Positions 2,797 to 57,186 of a DNA stretch of 63,537 nucleotides are shown here, piece after piece. The stretch is from Octopus bimaculoides. Lineage: Eukaryota. Within the stretch, counting starts at the first letter, position 1; every line of letters starts with the position of its first letter. The position numbers and the translations under genes are program-made. The stretch is taken from contig NC_068987.1 in NCBI RefSeq assembly GCF_001194135.2, positions 108,321,054-108,384,590 on the forward strand. The letters run 5' to 3'. The notes beneath the pieces are model-generated. The model was not told the origin of the DNA and searched no databases. It worked only from the letters and a program-made list of their open reading frames with translations.

Positions 2797-5700
2797 TCCA
2801 TTTTTCCTGGGCATCAATCTTATATACTTTTCCTGTTTTTCCTATCTCAAACATATTTTGTTTATACCTTTGACCCAGACACGCGCATATGCATATGTGT
2901 GTGTGTGTGTGTGTGTATGTGCATGTGCGGGTGTATGTATGTATGTATATATATATATATATATATATATNNNNNNNNNNNNNNNNNNNNNNNNNNNNNN
3001 NNNNNNNNNNNNNNNNNNNNNNNNNNNNNNNNNNNNNNNNNNNNNNNNNNNNNNNNNNNNNNNNNNNNNNNNNNNNNNNNNNNNNNNNNNNNNNNNNNNN
3101 NNNNNNNNNNNNNNNNNNNNNNNNNNNNNNNNNNNNNNNNNNNNNNNNNNNNNNNNNNNNNNNNNNNNNNNNNNNNNNNNNNNTAAGTAAGCTACTTACC
3201 ACACAGACACTCCTTGTGCCTATATCTATATCTATCTATCTAGCTATATATATATATATATATATATATATACGACGGTTTTCTTTCAGTTTCTGTTTAG
3301 CAGATCCACTCACAGTACTTCGGCCGGACCGGGTTTATGGTAGAAAACACTTGTCGAAAGTGACACGCAGTACTGAATTTGGAAGCATGTGTTTGCGAAG
3401 CAATTTTCTTAACATTCAGCTGTGCCAAGTAAACTTGAATAAAACTGACGAATCATAGTTAGATTGCTTCTGATTAATGTGCTTGCTCACATAGAGTTGA
3501 CTTGAGGCTAAACAAAAACGAACCACTCCAGCATAAGCGCTCGAGGGACCATCATGGCATCGATAAAGCTTCAATGTGGTCACACGATTTCCTAGAAATA
3601 CCAGCCAATTTCCCATCAAATCTGCATCGATTACGTTTGTTTTTCTCTAACACATTGTGGTCAGGAATTTTGAAGACCGTGTGGGTGCATATAGTTCAGA
3701 GTCCACATTCTAGGGCAAAAGAACGGAGGAAATAGAGTTGATCATACGTCTGCAGGATAAGACATAAGATGGAGGTATACAAGGACAGCAATAACACCAT
3801 CGACTAAAACGTGCTAAAAGGGAAGTAACTTAGTGGTCTCTGGTTGTGTCAGATATAACAGTCATAGTTTTCTCGAATTACACTTTAATTCATTAGTAGA
3901 ATGCATTGGAAAGTTTTGCTCAAAATATGTGATGACGGACCTATGACAGGTCAGATTTTAGGTTTGGGTGTAGCAAAGGAAACCACAGAAGGAATAATCT
4001 ACCTTCCGTTTATAAGTATTTACCAAAAAATTAAAATATATCTACAGATATGTGACATTCTAAAAATGGGATTAATAGATAAAGTAGAATGTTGACATAC
4101 TTGCCAAATAAAGATTGGTGGTTTTATAGTTTCAAAGTTCACTTTGCAATAATGTGCTTTCGGGGTCATATGTGTGGGCATGTGTGTGTACATGTATGTC
4201 ACTGTGTCTGTGCGTGTGAATGTGTGTGTTTATACCTATCTATGAGTGTGTGTGTATACATATCTATGTGTGTGTCTTTGTGCTTCTGTTGTTTCTACCC
4301 AGCATTCACTTGACAAGAGGTGTTGTGTTGTTTACGTTCCTGTAACATATCACATCTGCAAGCGAGATCGATGTACTAATTGTCGGACTTAAAATAAGGT
4401 CGATTTGCTCGACTAAATCTTCCGATGTGATGTCTTTCTATGGTTTCTTTCCAATGACTAAAACATATAAAAGATAAAAGACTCAACTGTCCAAGAGACA
4501 CAATACTCGCAATAAAAACAGTGATTGCTTAAACAATATTGCCATAAGGCTGCTGGAAGATATCGCCATAGGTCTGCGCAATTGTTCTGAGCAAACATGA
4601 AGAACAACAGTAATAACTCTACAACCGGTTGTACTTCTACTTTCGAGTTTTTGCATTTGTAACAATAGTTTCTGTCGTCGTCGGTGTTGCTAGATTTAGT
4701 GACGTATTGTATGCTATTTTGTTGTGTCTAAGGGGACTCGTTACGCGAATATTATTAACACACGCACTATTAGTAATATTGGCATAATGGCTCTCCCTAG
4801 ACACAGCAAAATTCGTTTTCACACACGAATACACATAAAGAATCTTGCGAACCAGATATAAAAACGAAGTATTGTATGATATTTCAATTGATATTACTAA
4901 GTCTTTGCAAAGGCTACGAGCTAACAAAATAGTTAGCACGCCGGACAAAAGGCTTATCATTATTTCATCCGTCTTTACGCTCTGAGTTCAAATTCTGCCG
5001 ATGTCAACTTTGCGTTTCATCCTTTCGGAATCGATTGAATAAGCAATATCCGAGTATTGGTGTCGATGTAATCGATTAGCCGCCACTCTCCCAAATTTGC
5101 CGGCCTTGTGCCCATACTAGAAAGGAATACTAATTCTTTGCCACTATGATGGGCATCGCCGTTTCCATCAAACCATAACAACGATCATCTTAATTCTCAT
5201 TTTACCAACGACATTTCCAGCGCCAGTATATCACCACTATTGAAACCCTACTCTTTTGTTCAGGTTCATTACCGCTATTACAAGCCCCAACAAGAATTTT
5301 ACTATCACAAGCATGATTGTCATTATTACTTATTTCTTTATTGCCCAAAAGGGACTAAACATAGAGGGGCCAGCAAGGACAGACAAAGGGATTAAGTCGA
5401 TTACATTGACCCGAGTGCGTAACTGGTACTTAATTTATCGACCCTGAAAGGATGAAAGGCAAAGTCGACCTCGGCGGAATTTGAACTCAGAACTTAACGA
5501 CAGACGAAATGTAGATATATGTACATTTATATATGTACATATATTTTATTTATGTGTTTCAGCCAAGTGGCTGCGGTCATGCTGGTGCACCACCGTGGGC
5601 GTGGCGGGCGAGTATGTGGGTGAACATGTGTGTTTCAAGCGAGGGTGATTTTGTATATACATATAGGCGAATGTACGGATTGGCTCGCTTACGCGAACAC

Positions 5701-5832
5701 TATAAACTTTTATACTCCCTTATCCGTACCCCCTCCCTTTACGTAGCGATCTACAGCTCTTTTGTCTTAATAGCGCTCAACCTCACAGTAATTTCCCGTT
5801 ATTTAACGGTCATTTTTCACAGGAATTTTCAA

Positions 5833-5906
5833 TGGCCGGATAACTGAAGAGATGTTGGCGTGGGTTCCCATCCCGGCATCCGAAACTCGGAGTTTTATCA
5901 TGGCTA
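5833..5906 (+). ncRNA. Type I hammerhead ribozyme, intact core
   Basis: Stem I TGGCCGGATAA (5833-5843) pairs with TTATC-A-TGGCTA (5895-5906, one bulge). Core CTGAAGA 5844-5850. Stem II GATGTTGG/CCGGCATC plus inner GTGG-GTTC-CCAT hairpin, with one extra C at 5881. GAAAC 5882-5886, stem III ACT-CGG-AGT, cleavage triplet GTT 5892-5894. Confidence 0.8.
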
Positions 5907-5954
5907 CCGAAAAAGTGTCACATATTTTTACAGATATATATATATTTATGTATG

Positions 5955-5986
<32 letters not shown>

Positions 5987-6459
5987 TAAACGACGAGCTT
6001 CTTTCAGATTCCGTCTCCCAAATCCACTTACAAGGCTTTGGTCGACCCGAGGTCACAGTAGAAGACACCTACCCAACGTCCCACAGTGGGACTGAACCCA
6101 GAAGCATGTGGTTTAGAAGCAAACTTCTTACCACACAGCCACATATTCGGCCTGCGCTAAGATACATTTACACGGTAGTTCCACCTATCACAAACAATCA
6201 GACAAAAAAAAAAAACGTGAATATGAGGAATAGCCTTTCGTCCAGCCATACCTTTTCTAAGCCATTATATATCTCCTCCATGGTTGATGTCATGCAACTT
6301 TCAGGAGTGAAATTACGCTATTCTGGAAGTATAATTCTTATAAATTAAATGCTTATTCTACAATATGTGTCGGGTTCTGCTTTATTTTGATTATCACTGA
6401 TTATCGTGTACTTAATATCACTTAAATTGTGTTGGTGACATTGCTGTTGGATATAATGT

Positions 6460-6804
6460 CGCAACTACTACTACTACTACTACTACTACTACAATTACTA
6501 TTACTACCACTATTACTGATGATGCTGCTGCCACTGCTATGGCTACCACCTCTACTACTACAACCACCATCACCACCGTCACCGCCGCCGCCACCATCAC
6601 CACAACCACCACCATCACAACCACCACCACCAGTACTGGTACTACTGCTGCTACTGCTACTACCTCTACTGCTAGAACCACCACCACCATTACTACTACC
6701 ACTACTATTACTACTACTACTACTACTACTATTACTACTACTACTACTACTACTACTACTAATAATAATAATAATAATAATAATAATACCACTGCTGCTA
6801 CGAT

Positions 6805-6845
<41 letters not shown>

Positions 6846-6955
6846 GCCGCTGCAATTATTTTTCTCCTTATTGCTGTTGTTTTTGCTTGTGGAAGTACTT
6901 GTTGTGGCTGTTGTGGTAGTACTGTTTCAACTGCTACCATAACTTCTACTATACA
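6460..6955. repeat. Compound trinucleotide array (ACT/ACC/AAT/GCT)
   Basis: Directly visible; explains the overlapping low-complexity ORFs. Confidence 0.95.
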
Positions 6956-7334
6956 CACACATACATCTAAGGACGGCCATATTTGATTATATTTGATTAT
7001 CTTTGAAGAATATGTTTGTTATAGCATTGATTATGGCTAAAAGCATCATCGCAGAAACAGCTATTAATGCTAGTTACAGACTGTATAATAAGAGGCCCAT
7101 GTTAGCCGTGGATTATTACAGAACTTAATTGAATGTAATCGGCATTGAATGAATATTTGCAACACTCTACAGAAGTACAGAAACAGTGTAAGCATAGAAT
7201 AAATAAATAACTAAATAAATAAATAAATAAAATAAAAGCAATGGCATCGGAGGCTGAATTGATATCGTGAAAAAAAAAGCGATATCAATTTTGTCTTTTA
7301 TGCTACCATTTCAAAAAATATGGTTGATCCATCT

Positions 7335-15198: not shown

Positions 15199-15382
15199 TA
15201 GTACCATGTAGTTGAACAAGAGAAATTAGTCATTACTTATTTTGTCCACTTTAAACGTTTCTTGATCATTTCTGTTTTTGTTCTGAAAATTGAAAAGTTT
15301 CTAATTGGACATTACTGTTGGGGAGAAATTGCCTTGGAATGCAACAGAGAAAAGAATCTTCATTCTTAAGTATCACAACATA

Positions 15383-15777
15383 TACTCTTTTTACTCTTAC
15401 TCTTTTACTTGTTTCAGTCATTTGACTGCGGCCATGCTGGAGCACCGCCTTTTGTCGAACAAATCGACCCCAGGACTTATTTTTGTAAGCCTAGTACTTA
15501 TTCTATCGGTTCCTTTGGCCGAACCGCTAAGTTACGGGGACGTAAACATACCACCATCGGTTGTCAAGCCGATGCTGGGGGGACAAACACAGACACAGAC
15601 TCATATATATATACGACAAGTTTCTTTCAGTTTCCGTCTACCAAATCCACTCAGAAGGCGTTGGTCGGCCCGAGGCTATAGTAGAAGACATTTGCCCAAA
15701 GTGCCACGCAGTGGGACTGAACCCGGAACCATGTGGTTGGTAAGCAAGCTACTTACCACACAGCCACTCCTGCGCCT
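15383..15777 (-). mobile_element. tRNA-derived SINE, family A, full length
   Basis: Head AGGCGCAGGAGTGGCTGTGTGG...GGTTCAGTCCC, CORE-like ...TTGGGCAAATGT, internal (CA/TA)n, (GTAAAAGA)n tail; many homologues in the window. Confidence 0.9.
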
Positions 15778-17394
15778 ATTATCCAGATATTTTATGACGT
15801 ACATCAATTACAATCGGGTCAAAGTTGAGGAAAAATTTCTTGAAAAATGTGCCTGTCACCTGACTATGTTTGAAACTCTCAACTTCAACAACAGCTATGC
15901 TGACCACCTTTTACTCTCAAAGATGGTGCATCAGTAAAAAATTATAATGTGATATTTTCAATGCAATAATTTCAAACGGATAAGAAAATAATGACAAATA
16001 AAAAATTACTGGTTTTGCCCCACTTAATGATTTTGCTTCACTCCACCCCATCCAACTTAACACTGGTACCTTGTTAGAGCATCAAATACTGCATTGTTAG
16101 CCTCAGGTGATCCTCTGGCATAGGTGCATCGTGCATAAAACTACACCAACATCGTATCCGATGAGAACCATCTGTTATGCGAGCCGGAAATACCATACAA
16201 AACGATTCTTATTTGCAATGATCTGTATGTGTGCTTTCATACATGAATCTTCTATGAAAAAGGTTCTCTCGCGGCTGATAAAGCAGTATTCAGTATTTTA
16301 TTCAATATATTTGTAATATTGTTCTGCTTATACATAGCTAAAAATATTTAAAATGTTATATTTGTCATTACAACTGCTGCTGAATTCTTTTAAACCAGAA
16401 TCAACTGATAAAGACTTAATTATAATAAAATTATTCCAGAGATGGATATTATATCTTATTTCCAGTATCAGAATACTACGAAACCTATACTCAATTTCCA
16501 TCCATTTGAAAAATAGTACGGTATAAATTGTACGTGATTTGGTAGTCATTTCTAGCAAGACGAACGACAACGTGGCCATCGGGTCTTTGGTTTCGTATTA
16601 TCTGATATTGTTTCTAATTTTCCTTTTGTATTCTTTCGTTTGCTAATGGACTTTTTTTTTCATTCAGCCCCATGAATGTAAACAGTTCAACTGGAACATT
16701 ATAGTATTCAATTTTTCCAGGTGAGTGCATTTTAATTTTTTTTTTTTTTATAATCATAGCCTAGATTAACTGAGTGAATCCTGTTGTTTGGTGGAAGACC
16801 AGCAATGAACTTGTTGAATGAAATGTCAACAGAAGTTCAAGTAACTAAGATTTTTTTTTTCCCTTTCATTGTTTCATTATTTACATCACACACACGCTCG
16901 CAGGCGCGCACACACGCGCGCACGCGCGCTCACACGGACGTACACGTATAATATACTTACATGCATATATATACTTCTTCATCTTGTACAAATACACACC
17001 ACTAACCACTTTAAGCCACTTCTCTTGTTTTGTGTGAGTGTGTGTGTCTATGTGTGCGTGTGTATGTGTGTGTATGTGTGTGTGCGTATGTGTGTGTTTA
17101 TGTATTTGTGTTAATTTTTTTTATGTCTGCGTTAGTCTCCCACCACTGCTTGACAACCGGTGTTAGGGAATTTCTCTTCGCGTAAGCTAGCGGTTCGGCA
17201 ACAGAGACCGATAGAATAAGCACAAAGCTTCAAAACAAAATAAGTACTGGGTCGATACGACTAAACTTCCTCAAGACGGTGCCACAGCATGGCCGCAGTC
17301 TGATGAGTGAAACAAGATAAAATATATATATATATATATTATTATTATTTGTATCAGTATATATATATATATACATATGCGTGCGTGTGTGTGC

Positions 17395-17931: not shown

Positions 17932-19160
17932 TGCGCCCAGATTTGGAGCACTGCCTATCGACGAAAGAATCGAACCCTGGACTTATTCTTTGTAAGCCTA
18001 TTACTTATTCTAACGATATATTTTCCGAACTGCTAAGTAACGGGGACATAAACACCCCAACATCGGTTATCAAGCGATGGTGGTGGGGGACAAACACTGA
18101 TACACAAACATATACATACATATATTTGTATATATATATATATATATNNNNNNNNNNNNNNNNNNNNNNNNNNNNNNNNNNNNNNNNNNNNNNNNNNNNN
18201 NNNNNNNNNNNNNNNNNNNNNNNNNNNNNNNNNNNNNNNNNNNNNNNNNNNNNNNNNNNNNNNNNNNNNNNNNNNNNNNNNNNNNNNNNNNNNNNNNNNN
18301 NNNNNNNNNNNNNNNNNNNNNNNNNNNNNNNNNNNNNNNNNNNNNNNNNNNNNNNNNNNNNNNNNNNNNNNNNNNNNNNNNNNNNNNNNNNNNNNNNNNN
18401 NNNNNNNNNNNNNNNNNNNNNNNNNNNNNNNNNGGGAGGGCTGCAATCAGAAAACCACTACTTGCAAAAATTAACGTTGCAAAGCGTTTAGAGTGGAGTA
18501 AAAACCTGCAGAATCGGTCCATAGATCAGTGGAAGAATGGAGGAGGATCTGTGATGATCTGGTGGTGGGGTCTATATCTTGGATATCCGCCGGTCCAATT
18601 GTTTCCCTTCATGACAGAATTAACAGTATGTTTAAGCATTTTATCTGATCAAATTCATCCTATGGTTGCGGAACTGTTTCCGGAGGGAAACGCAATCTTT
18701 CAGGATGATAATGCACCAATTCACACAGCTAAAATTGTTACTGAATGGCACGAGGAACTTTCTAGTGAAGTTGAACATCATATCTGGCCACCTCAGTCCC
18801 CAGATCTCAATATTATTGAACATTTTTGGTGCAATTTGGTAAAACAAGTGAGGAGTCGATATCCTCGATCATCATCACTACAAGAACGGGAGACTGTTTT
18901 AGCTGAGGAATGGACAAAAATTCCTTTGGAAACAATTCAAATGTTGTACGAGTCCATTACTCATAGAATTCAAGCTTTAATTGCTGCCAAAGGCGATTCA
19001 ACACCTTATTCAAAGAAATTTGTTTGAAATTTTAAGATGTTTCCATTATTTTGTCCAACCCCTGTATGTATATATACGCCGGACTTCTTTCAGTTTCCGT
19101 CAAGCAAATCTACTGACAAGGTTCTGGTCGGCCCGAGGTTTTTGCAGAAGACTCTTGTAT
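17932..19160 (-). mobile_element. SINE family A split by a Tc1 insertion
   Basis: 3' half at about 17932-18147; 5' half resumes after the Tc1 TIR at 19065-19160 (TATATACGCCGGACTTCTTTCAGTTTCCGTC). Confidence 0.75.
18434..19064 (+). mobile_element. Tc1-family (DD34E) transposon, 3' part, internally deleted
   Basis: RKPLL..RLEW..DQWK fused directly to GGGSVMIW (first catalytic D region missing); FQDDNAPIHTAK; WPPQSPDLNIIEHFW. Right TIR TGTTTCCATTATTTTGTCCAACCCCTG followed by TA at 19065-19066. Confidence 0.92.
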
Positions 19161-44646: not shown

Positions 44647-44791
44647 ACATGGAATAGATTTCTTTGAGATGGGATGCCTGAACTCACTAGCCGATGAATT
44701 CGTAAGTGCCTTTCTTATCGTTGATTTTTGGTGTCGCATGGCCAAAAATTACCGTGAATTTTTTTAGAGACACTTTCAAATTTATCAGAAT

Positions 44792-44856
44792 ATCGGACTG
44801 ATGATTTGGAATAGGGAAATTTTCATTCTCTTAACCATGAAACGATCGTATCCGAT
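44792..44856 (+). ncRNA. Type I minimal hammerhead ribozyme, intact core, partly decayed stem II
   Basis: Stem I ATCGGA/TCCGAT (6 bp perfect). CTGATGA 44798-44804. Imperfect stem II 44805-44838. GAAAC 44839-44843, palindromic ACGATCGT stem III, triplet GTA 44848-44850. Confidence 0.75.
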
Positions 44857-45888: not shown

Positions 45889-48800
45889 ATTGTTTTGAAT
45901 CAATCATGGATTATTTTGTAGCTTCAAGTGTTCGATGATGGGATTGTTTGTTTCTATAATGACAATGTAGAGTAGATGTGAGGGACCGGATTTGGCCAGT
46001 TTGAATATAAAGCAGGTAGAATATTTTGACCGGATATCGCAGCGAGACATTTACCTAATGATTATGTGGATAATCGGTTTTTCAGCTCACTTTGTGGAAT
46101 CCTAACGTATTTTTATTTCGTTTACAGAACCTTCTTTGGTATTTTCCTCAGCAATATCCTCAATGCTTCTTCTCTCATATATAGTACTTATATTCCAATA
46201 TAAACAATTTCTGCTGTTATAAACAGTATTTCTGTTCCAATAAACACTATTTGTATTATGGTAGGTGAATGTGGATTTGTTATTTAATACCTTAAGCTGT
46301 GAAATAATGTGATATCGGAAAAAATAAGCGCTAACTTATGACGCAAACTGCAAGCAAGAGATCCTATGTGTGTGATGTCGTGTGGTCACTCAGCATGCCA
46401 GAAATAACAGCCGAATGTTCTGCAAGCAACGCCCTACTATCATGCAAAAAAGCCTATTGGATAGTGTAGTCAGGAGCAAAAGAAAGTATTTATTTCACTA
46501 TCTTCACCACTATTGTCATTTTTACTGTTGTCATGAAGGTTGCAGTCGGGCAAAATTGTTAGCGCGCCGAACAAAATGCTCAGCGGTATTTCGTCTGTCT
46601 TCCGTCTGTCTTTGCGTTCTGAGTTCAAGTTTCCCCGAGGTTCGCTTTGCATTTTATACTTTCGGGGGCATGAAATAAATATTAGTGGAACACTGGGGTC
46701 AACATAATTGACTGTTTTCACACCCAAATAATTGCAAGGCTTGTAATTTTAGTAGAAAAAAGAAGAAAAAAAGAAAACTATTACACACACACACACACAC
46801 ATACACACACACACACACACACAAATCCACATATAAATTGAGAGAAAGAGATATTTTCTGAAAAATATCCCGGAATAATAATGACTTGAACGCACTCAAA
46901 TGAGTTGCCTGTGTTTAAACAACAACACCAAGGACAATTCCTAGGTCAGGAACCATGTATATAGAGCTTGAAGAACTGAACATAAGCCTGAGCAACTTTC
47001 ATTAAATTTCCTTAGGGAAAAGCTATAAATGGACAGCAGTGAAATATATTATCGTACTAACGCTAAGCACGATTCTTGTGCAAATCAAGAATCTTGATAC
47101 TTTCTCGTGTCTGTCTTAACCCGGTACTTGTGACGTTGCATTCTACACGGTGGAACGAACGTCACGCACCAAAACATTTGGCATTATATTCATATCATGG
47201 TGTTATTATCATTATTCGTTTTGTTCATTATGTAATAAAGTACGCGTGTATTCATCATTGTTTTACTTATCGTATTAATTTTTTTTAAATATCCGGTGCG
47301 TATTGAACTTATTTTGTGCTTGACTTTTGACCCACTCTGTACTTAATCTATAACTGAAGTACATTCATATAAGCAGTAATAACAACGATCTCTATAATTG
47401 GCACAATTCTACAAACTACGAACTATTTGGAGGATGAAATATCGCACTCATTTTATCAACCACGAAAAATAAAACGTTTAATTTGACTTCGACAGAAATG
47501 AAACACAGAAATAAAAAGACAATGAAATATATATTGTTCTGTTGTCTACAGATCCTGGCTCTCTCTGCCTTTGGTAAAACAAACTATTTATCGATGCTTC
47601 ATAAAAAAATGTTTTATTTATACACCTCGGCTTACATCATGCTGATGTTTTCTAAAAAGAATGAAACAATGAATACCAACAATTAAATGTTTTTCAGAAC
47701 AGTATAAGAAATTGAAAAATAATAAATATGTATGTTAAGGCGATGCCCCAACATGGCCGCAATCACATGACTGAAACAAGTAAAAGAATATTCCTTGCAT
47801 TTCAGCCTCATTCTTATTTAACTTGTACTAGCTTCTCGCTAGGGGACTGAAAATATTATTTTCTCTTCTCATTTTTAAGTATAGAAAACACCTCGACAGT
47901 TCTTTTGTTTCTATTAAAAGTCTTATACAGAAGAACACAGATACTTGGATGCAGCATTAGAGAGTCATCCCCTATGCAAGAGTATTAAATATGTATTTTG
48001 CCGGAGAGAAGCTGAGTAAATAAGGACAGAAGGTGCAAATAGCGTTGAGGAATAAATTTATACGCTTTGCTATTTGTTATCACAAAGATTCCTTTCTCCG
48101 TCTGGTAGCAGGTGCACGCGTGCATATTGTGAAATTGTCGATGTGGTTTCAGTTTTTGATGACACAGACATTATCATTATTGTTTTTGTAGTTGTTGTTT
48201 TCTTGTTTTGTGATAGCTATTTTTTTACGATGGTATTGCCGTTGTTCAGAGTAGAGGAAGCCTTCAGCCAAGTGATTCTCGGTGTTTTAATGCTATTATA
48301 GGAGTGAGTGTGCGTTTCTCTGTGCGCACAAACACACACACACACACACATACACGCACAGACACAAATACACGTACATTTTCTGTGTTACTGCACATGC
48401 AAGCACATCCACACAATAGAGGGCGAATGTTAAAGTTCCCGACCTAAAATCGTCCGCTCACAATAAAATAATTATATTTTATATGAAAGAAACATTCAAA
48501 AAATAGTTATTCACGTTTAAGTTGAGATCAAATTTATTTTCATCACTCGACAGTCTTCATTGTTTTATTTTCTCCTGCTTTTCTTTTTCTTTTTTCTTTT
48601 TCCCTCATTTGGTGAATAGGAAAGGGTACTATTCGTTTTTCGTTTTTATTTTTAGTCATTTACTTAAGGATACACAATTCATAATGATAGATCAAATTGC
48701 CCAAATCGTATTCTTCGTAGCAGAAATGATAGTTTATGGTGAATATAGACGAGATGTGGCGAAGGGAAAAAGAAATGTGGGGAGTAGGTCATATAACAGT

Positions 48801-48899
48801 GATGGTGATAGGAAGTGGAGAGAAATGATAATTGATAGAAAGAAGAAAGATGTGAAGGAGAAGCAGGGCGGGAAGCGATGATAAATAAATGTAAAGGAG

Positions 48900-49364
48900 A
48901 AGAGGATGGTGGAGGAGGAGGAGGAGGAGGAGGACGACGACGACGACGAGGAAAAGAAGGAGAAGGAACAGAAGAAGGAGGAGGGGTGATGTGAAGGAAG
49001 AAGAAAAGAAGAGAAATGATGAAGAAGAATAAAAAGGAGAAAAANNNNNNNNNNAGGGGGAGGACCAGGACGAGGACCAGGACGAGGAGGAGGAGGACGA
49101 GGAGGAGGAGTACGGGGACGAGGAGGAGGACGACGACGACGAGGAGGAGGACGAGGACAAGGACGAGGAGGAGGACGAGGACGAGGACGAGGAGGAGGAG
49201 GAGGAGGAGGACGACGACGACGACGAGGAAAAGAAGGAGAAGGAACAGAAGAAGGAGGAGGGGTGATGTGAAGGAAGAAGAAAAGAAGAGAAATGATGAA
49301 GAAGAATAAAAAGGAGAAAAAGCGCAAGAAAAATGATGATGATCATGATGGTATTGATGACGAC

Positions 49365-49403
<39 letters not shown>

Positions 49404-49550
49404 AAAGAAGAAGAAGAAGAAGAAGAAGAAGAAGAAGAAGAAAAAGAAGAAGAAGAAAAAGAAGAAGAAGAAAAAAGAAGAAGAAGAAGAAAAAGAAGAA
49501 GAAGAAAAAGAAGAAGAAGAAAAAGAAGAAGAAGAAAAAGAAGAAGAACG
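48900..49550. repeat. Purine-rich (GAG/GAC/GAT/GAA) trinucleotide array
   Basis: Directly visible; includes a duplicated block across a 10 N gap. Confidence 0.95.
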
Positions 49551-50394
49551 TGGTCAAGCGGTAGAAAGATATAAGTGGAGGTACTCCAGAGAGGAAGAGA
49601 GAGAGAGAGAGATACATACTAAGTTAGTGAAAAGCAGTAAAAATGGAATGCGTGCATCAAGTATGAAGAGGAAAAGATAACTCAATGAGGGAGAAAGTGA
49701 GATAGAAAAAGATTGATAGAGAGTTGGTGAGAGTGAAGTGAATATACAGAGAGAAAGAGAGAAAATTGAAGGGAAAACAAGGAGAAATATTACGATGTGG
49801 AAGACAGTAATAAGAAAAAAGAAAAAAAGAACAAGAGAATGCGAGAAAGAAAATCAGCAACATAAACAGAGAGACAAATAAAAGGAAAGTGATGAGAAAA
49901 AGATTCACAAAGGCGAAAGAGAGGAGATGAAGAACAATGAAGGAGAGAAGTGAAAGATGGCTATGAAAGATTTAGGTGATGGATAGATAGAAAGAAGAAA
50001 GATAAAGAGTTTGGAGAGGGATGGTGGGGCAGTAGTATTTCTTTACCGTTGACAAGTCATGCGTTAGGCCACCGATAAGCAGGAAGCTAAATTTTTCCTT
50101 AAAGAACGGAAGAAATAACTTCCAATCTGATCCATGATATAAAAGCGAGGAGAAGATAAAAGAATAAAAAAAAAATCGAATCTAAGATGGCGCTTAACGA
50201 TATTTTGTAGCTTCCGCTTAAACTTAACGTGTAACGTTATTAAAGACGGGTCTTGATCAGAACTAGCTAGATAGATATCGCACTATGAAGACCTACTATA
50301 AGGCCAGAAAGTACTTATTATATAACATAACAGCATAAACATAGCCATACATTAAATCACGTGTTGCAATGGTAGAAAGATCTGTGAGGGCACT

Positions 50395-56522: not shown

Positions 56523-56776
56523 TCTAATGATCCATTCCCTTTATATTTGCTGGTCATATAACAGGAAGTTGTGTTGTAGAGTAGCCTTTAGTTGAGATTA
56601 ATACTTTAGAAAGTTTAAATACTAGCAGTAGCACTATAGATGTCCTGAAGCATTGCTTCAAAGTCATACTAACTTTGGCATCCTTGAACCGTGTTGCTCC
56701 TTTGTCTTTAAAGATCTACGTTTTGACGTTCGTTTGCAAAACAACTCTGCCCCATCTTCGTTAAAATTTGCTGCAA

Positions 56777-57186
56777 TACTCTCTTTTACTCTCTTTTACT
56801 TGTTTCAGTCATTTGACTGTGGCCATGCTGGAGCACCGCCTTTAGTCGAGCAAATCGACCCCAGGACTTATTCTTTGTAAGCCTAGTATTTATTCTATCG
56901 ATCTCTTTTGTCGAACCGCTAAGTTACGGGGACGTAAGCACAACAGCATCGGTTGTCAACCGATGTTGGGGGGACAAACACAGACACACACACATACACA
57001 TATATGTATATACATATATATACGACGGGCTTCTTTCAGTTTCCGTCTACCAAATCCACTCACAAGACTTTGGTCGGCCCCAGGCTATAGTAGACGACAC
57101 TTGCCCAAGGTGCCACGCAGTGGGACTGAGCCCGGAACCATGTGGTTCGTAAGCAAGCTACTTACCACACAGCCACTCTTACGCCT
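56777..57186 (-). mobile_element. SINE family A, full length, inside the Tigger relic
   Basis: Highly similar to 15383-15777. Confidence 0.9.

What the first reader, a model, noticed from the sequence alone, without database searches (positions are those of the whole stretch)
5833..5906. Apparently intact type I hammerhead ribozyme hidden in repeat DNA
Seen: all conserved core nucleotides (CUGAAGA, GAAA, GUH), an 11 bp stem I with one bulge, an 8+4 bp stem II with a GUUC loop, and a 3 bp stem III whose sequence ACUC-GGAGU is one base short of the palindrome ACUCCGGAGU. Known: Penelope-like elements and retrozymes carry minimal type I hammerheads with palindromic stem III that cleave as dimers. 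Inference: this is a self-cleaving relic of an ORF-less retroelement (about 5600-5935) sitting between two halves of a family A SINE. The GUU triplet and the extra C at 5881 may slow cleavage.
Basis: partly seen in the sequence, partly recalled or inferred. Interest (0 to 1): 0.85.

Follow-up and report, generated by a model that had tools for sequence, protein, structure and literature searches.

The report
Solitary hammerhead ribozyme motif in repeat DNA
A 74-base stretch has all the sequence and pairing features of a dimer-type hammerhead self-cleaving RNA, the kind already known to litter animal genomes through Penelope-like retroelements; it is probably real but is an ordinary, solitary and probably inactive copy.

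Summary
A motif this good is expected about 5e-6 times per window by chance. In 400 simulated windows the best chance hit had 16 paired positions, against 22 here.

It is a type I hammerhead. Helices I and II are long and stable. Helix III is very weak (3 bp, about 3% probability as a monomer), but its segment ACUCGGAGU is self-complementary except for one central G/G. This is the architecture of the dimer-dependent hammerheads of Penelope-like elements and animal retrozymes.

Evidence against a firm call:
- No Rfam hammerhead model matches, even at E<=10 on 85 bases.
- An extra C lies between C11.1 and G12, and the cleavage triplet is GUU.
- There is no second copy, tandem unit or RT/endonuclease remnant in the 63.5 kb.
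- No homologue could be reached with the available collections, so covariation is untested.

The claim that it was inserted between two halves of a SINE is only weakly supported. Only a 46-nt tail-like piece lies on the left, and the SINE body is absent.

Best reading: a solitary relic of a hammerhead-bearing non-coding retroelement fragment, probably inert at this locus. It is a new member of a known kind, of low to moderate interest.

The parts
5833..5843 (+). Helix I, 5' strand (UGGCCGGAUAA)
   Evidence: Pairs with 5895-5906 as 5 bp, a bulged A5900, then 6 bp. Pair probabilities are mostly above 0.8.
5844..5850 (+). Conserved core box C3-A9: CUGAAGA
   Evidence: Read directly. It matches the CUGANGA consensus used in published descriptors (PMC8557442 methods).
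5851..5880 (+). Helix II hairpin: 8 bp, a C/C mismatch, 4 bp, and a GUUC loop. G5851-C5880 is the 10.1-11.1 pair.
   Evidence: Pair probabilities are 0.72-1.0. The hairpin is present in both the minimum-energy and the centroid folds.
5881..5881 (+). Unpaired extra C between C11.1 and G12. This is atypical, because hammerheads of Penelope-like elements carry their extra base on the other strand, between positions 9 and 10.1.
   Evidence: Read directly. My descriptor needs register e3=1 to accept the site. The comparison is with PMC4209133.
5882..5885 (+). Conserved core box G12 A13 A14 A15.1: GAAA
   Evidence: Read directly.
5885..5893 (+). Helix III / near-palindrome ACUCGGAGU. As a monomer it forms 3 bp with a CGG loop. 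Between two copies it forms 4+4 bp around a G/G mismatch.
   Evidence: Monomer pair probability is about 0.03. The intermolecular duplex is -12.1 kcal/mol. It passes the palindrome descriptor.
5894..5895 (+). Predicted self-cleavage site: after U5894 (H17, triplet GUU) and before U5895 (position 1.1)
   Evidence: Inferred from standard hammerhead numbering applied to the sequence. No cleavage was tested.
5895..5906 (+). Helix I, 3' strand (UUAUCAUGGCUA, with A5900 bulged)
5668..5928 (+). Non-coding segment that carries the hammerhead near its 3' end. This is the minimal extent; it may start at 5595. GC is 0.44. It is single-copy in the window.
   Evidence: - No other copy was found by blastn, nhmmer or the covariance model.
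- It is not homologous to the SINE body.
- No Pfam hit in six frames.
- It is not unusually structured as a whole (z -0.34).
- GC content.
5549..5594 (-). Flank: SINE tail-like fragment, about 82% identical to the tail of the canonical SINE copies in the window
   Evidence: Local alignments to the copies at 56760-57010 and 15370-15615.
5929..5989 (.). Flank: (TA)n/(TATG)n microsatellite directly 3' of the segment. A shorter TA-rich stretch lies at 5650-5667 and another at 5510-5548.
   Evidence: Tandem Repeats Finder and repeat tables.
5990..6160 (-). Flank: tRNA-derived SINE head on the opposite strand to the hammerhead. An A-box-like site lies at 6131 and a B-box-like site at 6088 on the minus strand.
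   Evidence: Matches to five or more other heads in the window. It is 73-81% identical to them. Box scan.

Best explanation
5833-5906 is a genuine hammerhead-lineage motif of the dimer-dependent type I kind. This kind is carried by the pseudo-LTRs of Penelope-like elements and by their non-autonomous derivatives, the animal non-LTR retrozymes.

Proposed mechanism in the parent element (inferred):
1. A transcript or transcripts carrying two such motifs pair their self-complementary helix III segments (ACUCGGAGU) into a double hammerhead.
2. Each core then cleaves its own strand after U17. At this locus that is between 5894 and 5895.
3. By standard hammerhead chemistry the products carry a 5'-OH and a 2',3'-cyclic phosphate. 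The RNA is thereby cut to unit length for reverse transcription or circularisation.

The copy in this window is a solitary, non-coding fragment of about 260-330 nt with the ribozyme near its 3' end. It lies among TA-rich microsatellites and SINE fragments. It has no partner copy within 63.5 kb. Helix III is very weak, an extra C follows helix II, and the triplet is GUU. It is therefore most likely catalytically silent or very slow in place.

Shown here: the motif, its statistics, its fold and its genomic setting. Inferred: its retroelement origin, the dimer mechanism and its present inactivity.
For: - All core nucleotides and all three helices are present.
- Helices I and II are stable in the ensemble.
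- About 5e-6 equally good motifs are expected per window by chance. The best of 400 simulated windows had 16 pairs, against 22 here.
- It is the only hit of a dimer-type descriptor that requires a palindromic helix III segment. That descriptor's null rate is 0.013 per window.
- The intermolecular helix III duplex is -12.1 kcal/mol, against a monomer helix III probability of about 0.03.
- Published hammerheads of Penelope-like elements have a long helix II (6-8 bp), a G10.1-C11.1 pair, a palindromic 15.2-16.2 segment and loop 3, mostly occur as single dispersed motifs, and show very low activity even as dimers (PMC4209133).
- Insertion bias toward microsatellites is described for the Naiad/Chlamys clade of Penelope-like elements, with (TA)n common for Naiads (PMC8557442). 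This segment abuts TA-rich repeats on both sides.
- Animal retrozyme units are about 300 bp with GC below 45% (PMC7229834). This segment is 261-334 bp with GC 0.44-0.45.
Against: - No Rfam hammerhead family matches, even at E<=10.
- The unpaired base is on the 3' side of helix II (C5881). The published Penelope-like-element consensus has it between positions 9 and 10.1 (PMC4209133).
- GUU is not among the triplets listed for the viroid and satellite hammerheads in PMC1636495.
- There is no second copy, no tandem unit and no reverse transcriptase or GIY-YIG remnant nearby.
- No homologue could be retrieved, so there is no evidence of covariation or of a family.
- The alternative pairing CUGA (5844-5847) with UCGG (5887-5890) competes with the active fold in about half of the ensemble.
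Confidence: 0.65

Rival explanations
1. Chance look-alike. An ordinary stretch of hairpin-rich non-coding DNA happens to carry CUGANGA, GAAA and UH at the junction of three helices. It never was a ribozyme.
For: - No Rfam hammerhead hit.
- Only one copy, with no family evidence.
- Several deviations had to be allowed: a bulge in helix I, the extra C5881, a 3-bp helix III and the GUU triplet.
- A weak chance-level descriptor hit does occur elsewhere in the window, at 44798-44850.
Against:
- None of 400 simulated windows came within 6 base pairs of it.
- The near-palindromic helix III segment is an independent feature that a hammerhead does not strictly need, yet it is typical of the animal dimer-type class (PMC4209133).
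Confidence: 0.1
2. The segment is the body of a distinct SINE subfamily that shares the head at 5990-6160 and the tail at 5549-5594. The hammerhead then lies on the antisense strand of that SINE, either as a passenger or as an antisense-encoded module.
For: - Head and tail pieces lie in the same orientation on either side.
- The head is a diverged subtype, 73-81% identical to heads that are 79-91% identical to one another. A different body would therefore not be surprising.
Against: - The hammerhead is antisense to the SINE's Pol III promoter.
- A5 at 5910-5914 reads as T5 on the SINE-sense strand. That would be a Pol III terminator ahead of the segment.
- No second copy of such a body exists among the seven or more SINE copies in the window.
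- Other heads of similar subtype carry only a microsatellite, without body or tail.
Confidence: 0.1
3. A host-domesticated, single-copy regulatory hammerhead, for example intronic or in a UTR. It would be kept by selection at this locus rather than being a transposon relic.
For: - All 23 helix I and helix II pairs and the whole core are intact, although the neighbouring SINE pieces are about 20% diverged from their relatives.
- The segment is single-copy in the window.
Against: - No gene context is visible. The surroundings are SINEs, microsatellites and assembly gaps.
- The motif lacks a stable helix III and has no geometry for loop-loop contacts, so it is poorly suited to cleaving as a monomer in cis.
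- An intact motif is equally well explained by a recent insertion.
Confidence: 0.05

Closest known systems
Minimal type I hammerheads in the pseudo-LTRs of Penelope-like elements (Cervera & de la Pena 2014, PMC4209133; reviewed in PMC6765202)
   Same: - Type I topology.
- A long helix II: 8 bp before the first interruption here, 6-8 bp published.
- A G10.1-C11.1 closing pair.
- A very weak helix III whose segment is self-complementary, which implies action as a dimer.
- Occurrence as a single dispersed motif in repeat-rich DNA.
- A position close to the 3' end of a non-coding fragment.
- An ATG at the first bases of helix II (5852), as reported for the Anolis PAc element (PMC11167929).
   Different: - The extra unpaired base is 3' of helix II (between 11.1 and G12), not between 9 and 10.1.
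- Helix I is much longer: 11 bp, against 4-5 bp.
- Helix II carries a second 4-bp segment.
- The palindrome has a central G/G mismatch.
- The triplet is GUU.
- No RT/GIY-YIG ORF or second pseudo-LTR is nearby.
- No family of copies was seen.
Animal non-LTR retrozymes: tandem repeats of about 170-400 bp with type I hammerheads that are expressed as circular RNAs (PMC7229834; preprint 10.64898/2026.07.22.740005)
   Same: - A non-coding unit of similar size (261-334 bp) and GC (0.44-0.45).
- A type I hammerhead with a short palindromic helix III.
- The preprint's analysis counts solitary ('solo') monomer copies alongside dimers and multimers.
   Different: - There is no tandem arrangement.
- It does not have the canonical 6-bp helix I and 4-bp helix II with loop-loop contacts.
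- The segment as a whole is not unusually structured (z -0.34).
Canonical type I hammerheads of newt satellite 2 and Schistosoma Sm-alpha (Rfam Hammerhead_1, as I recall the family's content)
   Same: The same catalytic core boxes and type I topology. They sit in repetitive DNA, and the newt ribozyme also depends on dimers (PMC7229834).
   Different: No match to any Rfam hammerhead model at E<=10. Helix II is three times longer. No loop 1/loop 2 contact geometry is recognisable. It is not co-oriented with a Pol III promoter, as Sm-alpha is (PMC6765202).
sCYDV-RPV (+) satellite hammerhead with an atypically long, segmented helix II (Table 1 of PMC1636495)
   Same: [quoted passage not shown]
   Different: It belongs to a plant virus satellite and has a stable 6-bp helix III and an AUA triplet. 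No relationship is implied.

Membership tests
Hammerhead ribozyme (any type) | Conserved core: C3 U4 G5 A6 N7 G8 A9, G12 A13 A14, the A15.1-U16.1 pair, and H17 (not G) | tested here: met
   CUGAAGA at 5844-5850, GAAA at 5882-5885, A5885-U5893, and U5894.
Hammerhead ribozyme (any type) | Three helices radiating from the core, with helix II closed by G10.1-C11.1 directly adjacent to A9 and G12 | tested here: inconclusive
   Helices I and II are strong and helix III has only 3 bp. G5851-C5880 closes helix II, but an extra C5881 separates it from G12. Whether this is tolerated is unknown.
Hammerhead ribozyme (any type) | Match to a curated covariance model (Rfam hammerhead clan CL00010) | tested here: not met
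   No hammerhead match at gathering score on the whole window, nor at E<=10 on 601 nt or 85 nt.
Hammerhead ribozyme (any type) | Site-specific, Mg2+-dependent self-cleavage | not testable with these tools
   This needs in vitro transcription of monomer and tandem dimer, or mapping of RNA ends at 5894/5895.
Minimal hammerhead of Penelope-like elements | Long helix II (6-8 bp) | tested here: met
   8 contiguous pairs plus a further 4. Criterion from PMC4209133.
Minimal hammerhead of Penelope-like elements | Palindromic 15.2-16.2 segment and loop 3, which allows a dimeric helix III | tested here: met
   ACUCGGAGU is self-complementary at 8 of 9 positions. The duplex is -12.1 kcal/mol.
Minimal hammerhead of Penelope-like elements | [quoted passage not shown] | tested here: not met
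   A5850 is followed directly by the paired G5851. The unpaired base is on the other strand, at C5881.
Minimal hammerhead of Penelope-like elements | Location in a pseudo-LTR flanking an RT plus GIY-YIG ORF, or demonstrable homology to such a pseudo-LTR | tested here: not met
   - No Pfam domain in the six frames of 5596-5928.
- No ORF of 130 aa or more in the window other than a Tc1/mariner transposase fragment, low-complexity runs and SINE-derived frames, judged by inspection.
- No similar sequence was retrievable.
- Most published motifs are likewise solitary (PMC4209133), so this failure does not exclude descent from such an element.
Minimal hammerhead of Penelope-like elements | Membership in a multi-copy consensus family with compensatory changes | tested here: inconclusive
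   There is no second copy in the 63.5 kb. The source genome is not available in any searchable collection, so the genome-wide test could not be run.
Animal non-LTR retrozyme | Head-to-tail tandem repeats with a hammerhead in each of at least two units | tested here: not met
   No direct repeat or tandem unit longer than the microsatellites around the motif. There is only one hammerhead in the window.
Animal non-LTR retrozyme | Unit of about 170-400 bp with GC below 45% | tested here: inconclusive
   The segment is 261-334 bp with GC 0.44-0.45, but its boundaries are not defined by any repeat.
Animal non-LTR retrozyme | Canonical helix I (about 6 bp) and helix II (about 4 bp) with loop 1-loop 2 tertiary contacts | tested here: not met
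   Helix I has 5+6 bp and is open-ended. Helix II has 8+4 bp. No canonical loop geometry is present (inference from PMC4209133 and PMC7229834).

The most novel reading that the evidence does not exclude
The motif is the first sighted member of a lineage-specific family of hammerhead-bearing non-autonomous elements, apparently in a cephalopod. In this reading the ribozyme is still active as a dimer despite several unusual features. It has a bulged C between C11.1 and G12, which mirrors the 9/10.1 bulge of known hammerheads in Penelope-like elements. It also has a 12-bp two-segment helix II, an 11-bp helix I and a GUU cleavage triplet. This would extend the tolerated core-adjacent variation of natural hammerheads.
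Probability: 0.15. Interest if true: 0.45.

Novelty: new member of a known kind. Interest (0 to 1): 0.25.

Why it matters
Hammerheads of this dimer-dependent kind are already known to occur by the thousands in many animal genomes, as parts of Penelope-like elements and retrozymes. One more solitary copy therefore changes little.

Two things could matter modestly:
1. If the source genome holds a family of these, it would document such ribozymes in a lineage where I found no report. Full-text searches for hammerhead plus octopus or cephalopod returned only a paper on PLE clades that lack canonical hammerheads.
2. The extra C on the 3' side of helix II and the GUU site, if active, would widen the known natural sequence space of the hammerhead core surroundings.

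For annotation, this case shows that Rfam models miss this class and that descriptor searches are needed.

Tried and rejected
1. Rfam scans at three scales found no hammerhead. The only matches near the site are microRNA models that hit the (TATG)n microsatellite, which I take to be false positives.
2. Searches for other copies in the window found none. I used blastn with word sizes 9 and 7, nhmmer, and a covariance model built from the single sequence and run with filters off. The next best score was 12.8 bits at E 0.58.
3. I tried to fish for copies elsewhere through spurious ORFs.
   - An 84-aa frame and a concatenated six-frame query were run against the 5.8-billion protein set. Neither gave a hit.
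   - Exact look-ups of five window ORFs found none in the collection.
4. A pattern scan of metagenome contigs gave 6 matches. All lack GAAA after the helix II match and look like chance matches in protein-coding DNA. The viral contig scan gave none.
5. I tried to identify the organism through the Tc1/mariner fragment at 18551-19027.
   - The best hits are 74-79% identical, from unnamed JGI and ENA contigs.
   - Two long ENA contigs fetched through lower-ranked hits of that search do not carry the window's SINEs.
   - The organism therefore stays unverified. My impression that the SINEs are octopus SINEs rests on memory only, and a literature string search found nothing.
6. I considered that the motif is a mutated antisense copy of the canonical SINE body, because GUCAAGCGAUGUUGG resembles CUGAAGAGAUGUUGG. 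I rejected this because local alignment of 5591-5935 to three canonical bodies scores within the shuffle range.
7. I considered a tRNA-like or Pol III reading of helix II, which contains the B-box-like GGTTCCCATCC at 5863. ARAGORN finds no tRNA, the only A-box-like site on the same strand is 300 nt away, and U-runs would stop Pol III.
8. I tested whether the whole segment folds like a viroid-like retrozyme RNA. It does not (z -0.34).

Full report
**Observation.** The sequence at 5833-5906 on the plus strand reads UGGCCGGAUAA-CUGAAGA-[GAUGUUGG C GUGG GUUC CCAU C CCGGCAUC]-C-GAAA-CUCGGAGU-U|UUAUCAUGGCUA. In standard hammerhead numbering this gives:
- Helix I of 5 bp, a bulged A5900, then 6 bp (5833-5843 with 5895-5906).
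- The C3-A9 box at 5844-5850.
- Helix II of 8 bp, a C/C mismatch, then 4 bp closed by GUUC (5851-5880).
- An unpaired C at 5881.
- G12-A15.1 at 5882-5885.
- A helix III of only three pairs (A5885-U5893, C5886-G5892, U5887-A5891) with a CGG loop.
- U5894 as H17, so cleavage would fall between 5894 and 5895.

RNAfold keeps helices I and II in both the minimum-energy and the centroid structures (z = -2.2).

**Is it more than chance?** I wrote a descriptor that allows everything this site needs. It accepts one optional unpaired base on either side of helix II, one bulge in helix I, a helix III of at least 2 bp, and any H at position 17.
- In the real window it finds this site (helices of 11, 8 and 3 pairs) and one much poorer site at 44798-44850 (6, 4 and 2 pairs; helix II is three G-U pairs and one A-U).
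- In 400 first-order Markov windows of the same composition, loose hits occur 0.26 times per window. The best had 16 paired positions in all, against 22 here.
- An analytic estimate for an equally good motif is about 5e-6 per window.
- A second descriptor requires the A15.1-U16.1 segment to be self-complementary, the hallmark of dimer-type animal hammerheads. It finds only this site, and its null rate is 0.013 per window even at its loosest thresholds.

The motif is therefore very unlikely to be a chance arrangement, even allowing for the screening of many windows.

**The covariance-model test.**
- Rfam 15 gives no match at gathering scores anywhere in the window.
- It gives no hammerhead match at E<=10 on 601 nt or on 85 nt around the site.
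- The nearby matches are microRNA models hitting the (TATG)n microsatellite.

I read this as 'not a canonical Rfam-type hammerhead' rather than 'not a hammerhead'. The 30-nt helix II, the extra C and the 3-bp helix III are all penalised by models built from canonical sequences. The Penelope-type minimal hammerheads themselves had to be found with dedicated descriptors (PMC4209133; methods of PMC8557442). I could not score a positive control of that class, so this reading is an inference.

**Fold and likely activity.**
- The hammerhead secondary structure has -22.7 kcal/mol, against -26.4 for the minimum-energy fold.
- Helices I and II have pair probabilities mostly above 0.9. The three helix III pairs have about 0.03.
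- An alternative pairing of CUGA (5844-5847) with UCGG (5887-5890) occupies about half of the ensemble and would sequester part of the core.
- Two copies could pair their helix III segments into a duplex of -12.1 kcal/mol.

This is the behaviour described for newt, axolotl and Penelope-type hammerheads, which cleave poorly or not at all as monomers and better as dimers (PMC4209133, PMC7229834, PMC6765202). Three further features argue for low activity:
- The extra C between C11.1 and G12.
- The GUU triplet. Natural viroid and satellite hammerheads mostly use GUC, with GUA and AUA as exceptions (PMC1636495).
- Helix lengths that do not fit the canonical loop 1-loop 2 contact geometry.

A long segmented helix II does have a natural precedent, in sCYDV-RPV (+) (Table 1 of PMC1636495).

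**Surroundings.** The window is AT-rich (GC 0.37). It is full of N gaps, microsatellites and copies of a tRNA-derived SINE. From memory these look like octopus SINEs, but I could not verify the organism with the tools.

Around the motif the order is:

| Coordinates | Feature |
|---|---|
| 5510-5548 | TA-rich microsatellite |
| 5549-5594 | 46-nt piece about 82% identical to the SINE tail |
| 5595-5649 | GT-rich stretch |
| 5650-5667 | short TA-rich stretch |
| 5668-5928 | unique segment, with the hammerhead 22 nt from its end |
| 5929-5989 | (TA)n/(TATG)n |
| 5990-6160 | SINE head |

Both SINE pieces lie on the minus strand, so the hammerhead is antisense to them.

The idea that an element sits between two halves of one SINE is weak, for five reasons:
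1. The roughly 190-nt SINE body is missing.
2. 5591-5935 aligns to canonical bodies no better than shuffled sequence does.
3. The head here is 73-81% identical to other heads, which are 79-91% identical to one another.
4. Other head-plus-microsatellite units without body or tail occur at 3221-3420 and 19063-19152, and a solitary tail occurs near 17278-17338.
5. The run A5 at 5910-5914 is T5 on the SINE-sense strand, where it would act as a Pol III terminator. This argues against the segment being a working SINE body.

**What the segment itself shows.**
- It has no other copy in the window by blastn, nhmmer or a covariance model built from the site.
- It has no tandem or long direct repeat.
- It has no Pfam domain in any frame.
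- It has no unusual overall structure (z = -0.34).
- Its size (261-334 bp) and GC (0.44-0.45) fit a retrozyme unit or a truncated pseudo-LTR, but they also fit ordinary DNA (PMC7229834).

Two small parallels with Penelope-like elements are worth noting, though they prove nothing:
- The segment abuts TA-rich microsatellites. Microsatellite insertion bias, with (TA)n common for Naiads, is reported for the Naiad/Chlamys clade of Penelope-like elements (PMC8557442).
- An ATG (5852-5854) sits at the first bases of helix II. In the Anolis PAc element the ORF starts at the beginning of helix II (PMC11167929). Here that ORF runs only 45 codons, into the microsatellite.

**Related sequences elsewhere.** None could be reached. 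The searchable DNA collections are bacterial, viral or metagenomic.
- A family-specific pattern gave six chance matches in metagenome contigs that look like protein-coding DNA, none followed by GAAA. It gave no match in viral contigs.
- Fishing through spurious ORFs gave nothing, and exact look-ups gave nothing. The protein set does contain ORFs called on eukaryote-like ENA contigs.
- The tests for covariation and family membership are therefore open, not negative.

**Best explanation (confidence about 0.65).** This is a solitary relic of a hammerhead-bearing, non-coding retroelement fragment of the Penelope-like/retrozyme lineage. In the parent, two motifs in one multimeric transcript, or in two transcripts, would form a double hammerhead through the self-complementary helix III segment. 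Each would cut after position 17 and so trim the RNA to unit length. At this locus there is no partner, and the motif carries unfavourable features, so it is probably silent.

**Rivals.**

| Rival | Confidence |
|---|---|
| Pure chance | about 0.10 |
| Antisense body of a distinct SINE subfamily | about 0.10 |
| Domesticated single-copy ribozyme | about 0.05 |

**Comparison with known families.**
- It works like the dimer-type minimal hammerheads of Penelope-like elements. It shares their long helix II, the G10.1-C11.1 pair, the palindromic helix III and the solitary dispersed occurrence.
- It fails two of their listed features: the unpaired base lies on the other side of helix II, and there is no demonstrable pseudo-LTR context.
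- It fails the tandem-repeat definition of retrozymes.
- It fails the Rfam models.

I therefore file it as a hammerhead of that general kind, not as a proven member of any one family.

**Verdict.** Novelty is 'new member of a known kind', and interest is 0.25. The most novel reading still open is an active, lineage-specific family with a mirror-image bulge and a GUU site. I give it about 0.15 probability and 0.45 interest if true.

Noticed in passing
window 44798-44850 (+): A second, much weaker hammerhead-descriptor hit: CUGAUGA, a 4-pair helix II made of three G-U pairs and one A-U, GAAA, a 2-bp helix III and a 6-bp helix I. Rfam Hammerhead_3 touches 44777-44823 at 12.2 bits (E 5.3). Its quality is within what simulated windows give, so I take it as chance.
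   Followed up: yes
window 5852-5989 (+): An ATG sits at the first bases of helix II and opens a 45-codon ORF that runs into the microsatellite. In the Anolis PAc Penelope-like element the ORF also begins at the start of helix II (PMC11167929). The peptide had no database match.
   Followed up: partly
window 5863-5873 (+): The tip of helix II contains GGTTCCCATCC, which has two mismatches to the Pol III B-box consensus GGTTCGANNCC. No tRNA-like fold is found, and the only A-box-like site on the same strand is 300 nt upstream, so it is probably a coincidence.
   Followed up: yes
window 5910-5914: A5 on the plus strand reads as T5 on the SINE-sense strand, a Pol III terminator between the SINE head and the hammerhead segment. 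The plus strand also has U4-U5 runs, including UUUU across the predicted cleavage site (5893-5896).
   Followed up: partly
window 18551-19027 (+): A C-terminal fragment of a Tc1/mariner-type DDE_3 transposase (Pfam PF13358 relatives). The best matches are 74-79% identical, from unnamed JGI and ENA contigs. Named hits are spider and amphipod 'Tcb1/Tcb2 transposase' entries.
   Followed up: partly
window 4930-5110 (+) and 5340-5510 (-): Two copies of a second SINE family lie in inverted orientation just upstream of the finding. The second copy is cut off by the TA microsatellite at 5510.
   Followed up: no
window 3221-3420, 19063-19152, about 17278-17338: SINE head-plus-microsatellite units without body or tail, and a solitary tail-plus-microsatellite piece. 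The SINE seems to be modular, or is often broken at its internal microsatellite.
   Followed up: partly
window 5927-5994 and 5500-5559: Rfam microRNA models (mir-297 at 35.5 bits, mir-1277, mir-3149) match the (TA)n/(TATG)n microsatellites far below their gathering scores. These are low-complexity false positives.
   Followed up: yes
whole window: There are 4261 N bases in many gaps, nearly all flanked by microsatellites. This indicates a short-read draft assembly, so repeat copy structure near the gaps is unreliable.
   Followed up: no
window 6418-6990 and 48679-49617: Long trinucleotide and low-complexity tracts (ACT/ACC repeats; poly-T- and CT-rich runs) give long spurious ORFs on both strands.
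   Followed up: no
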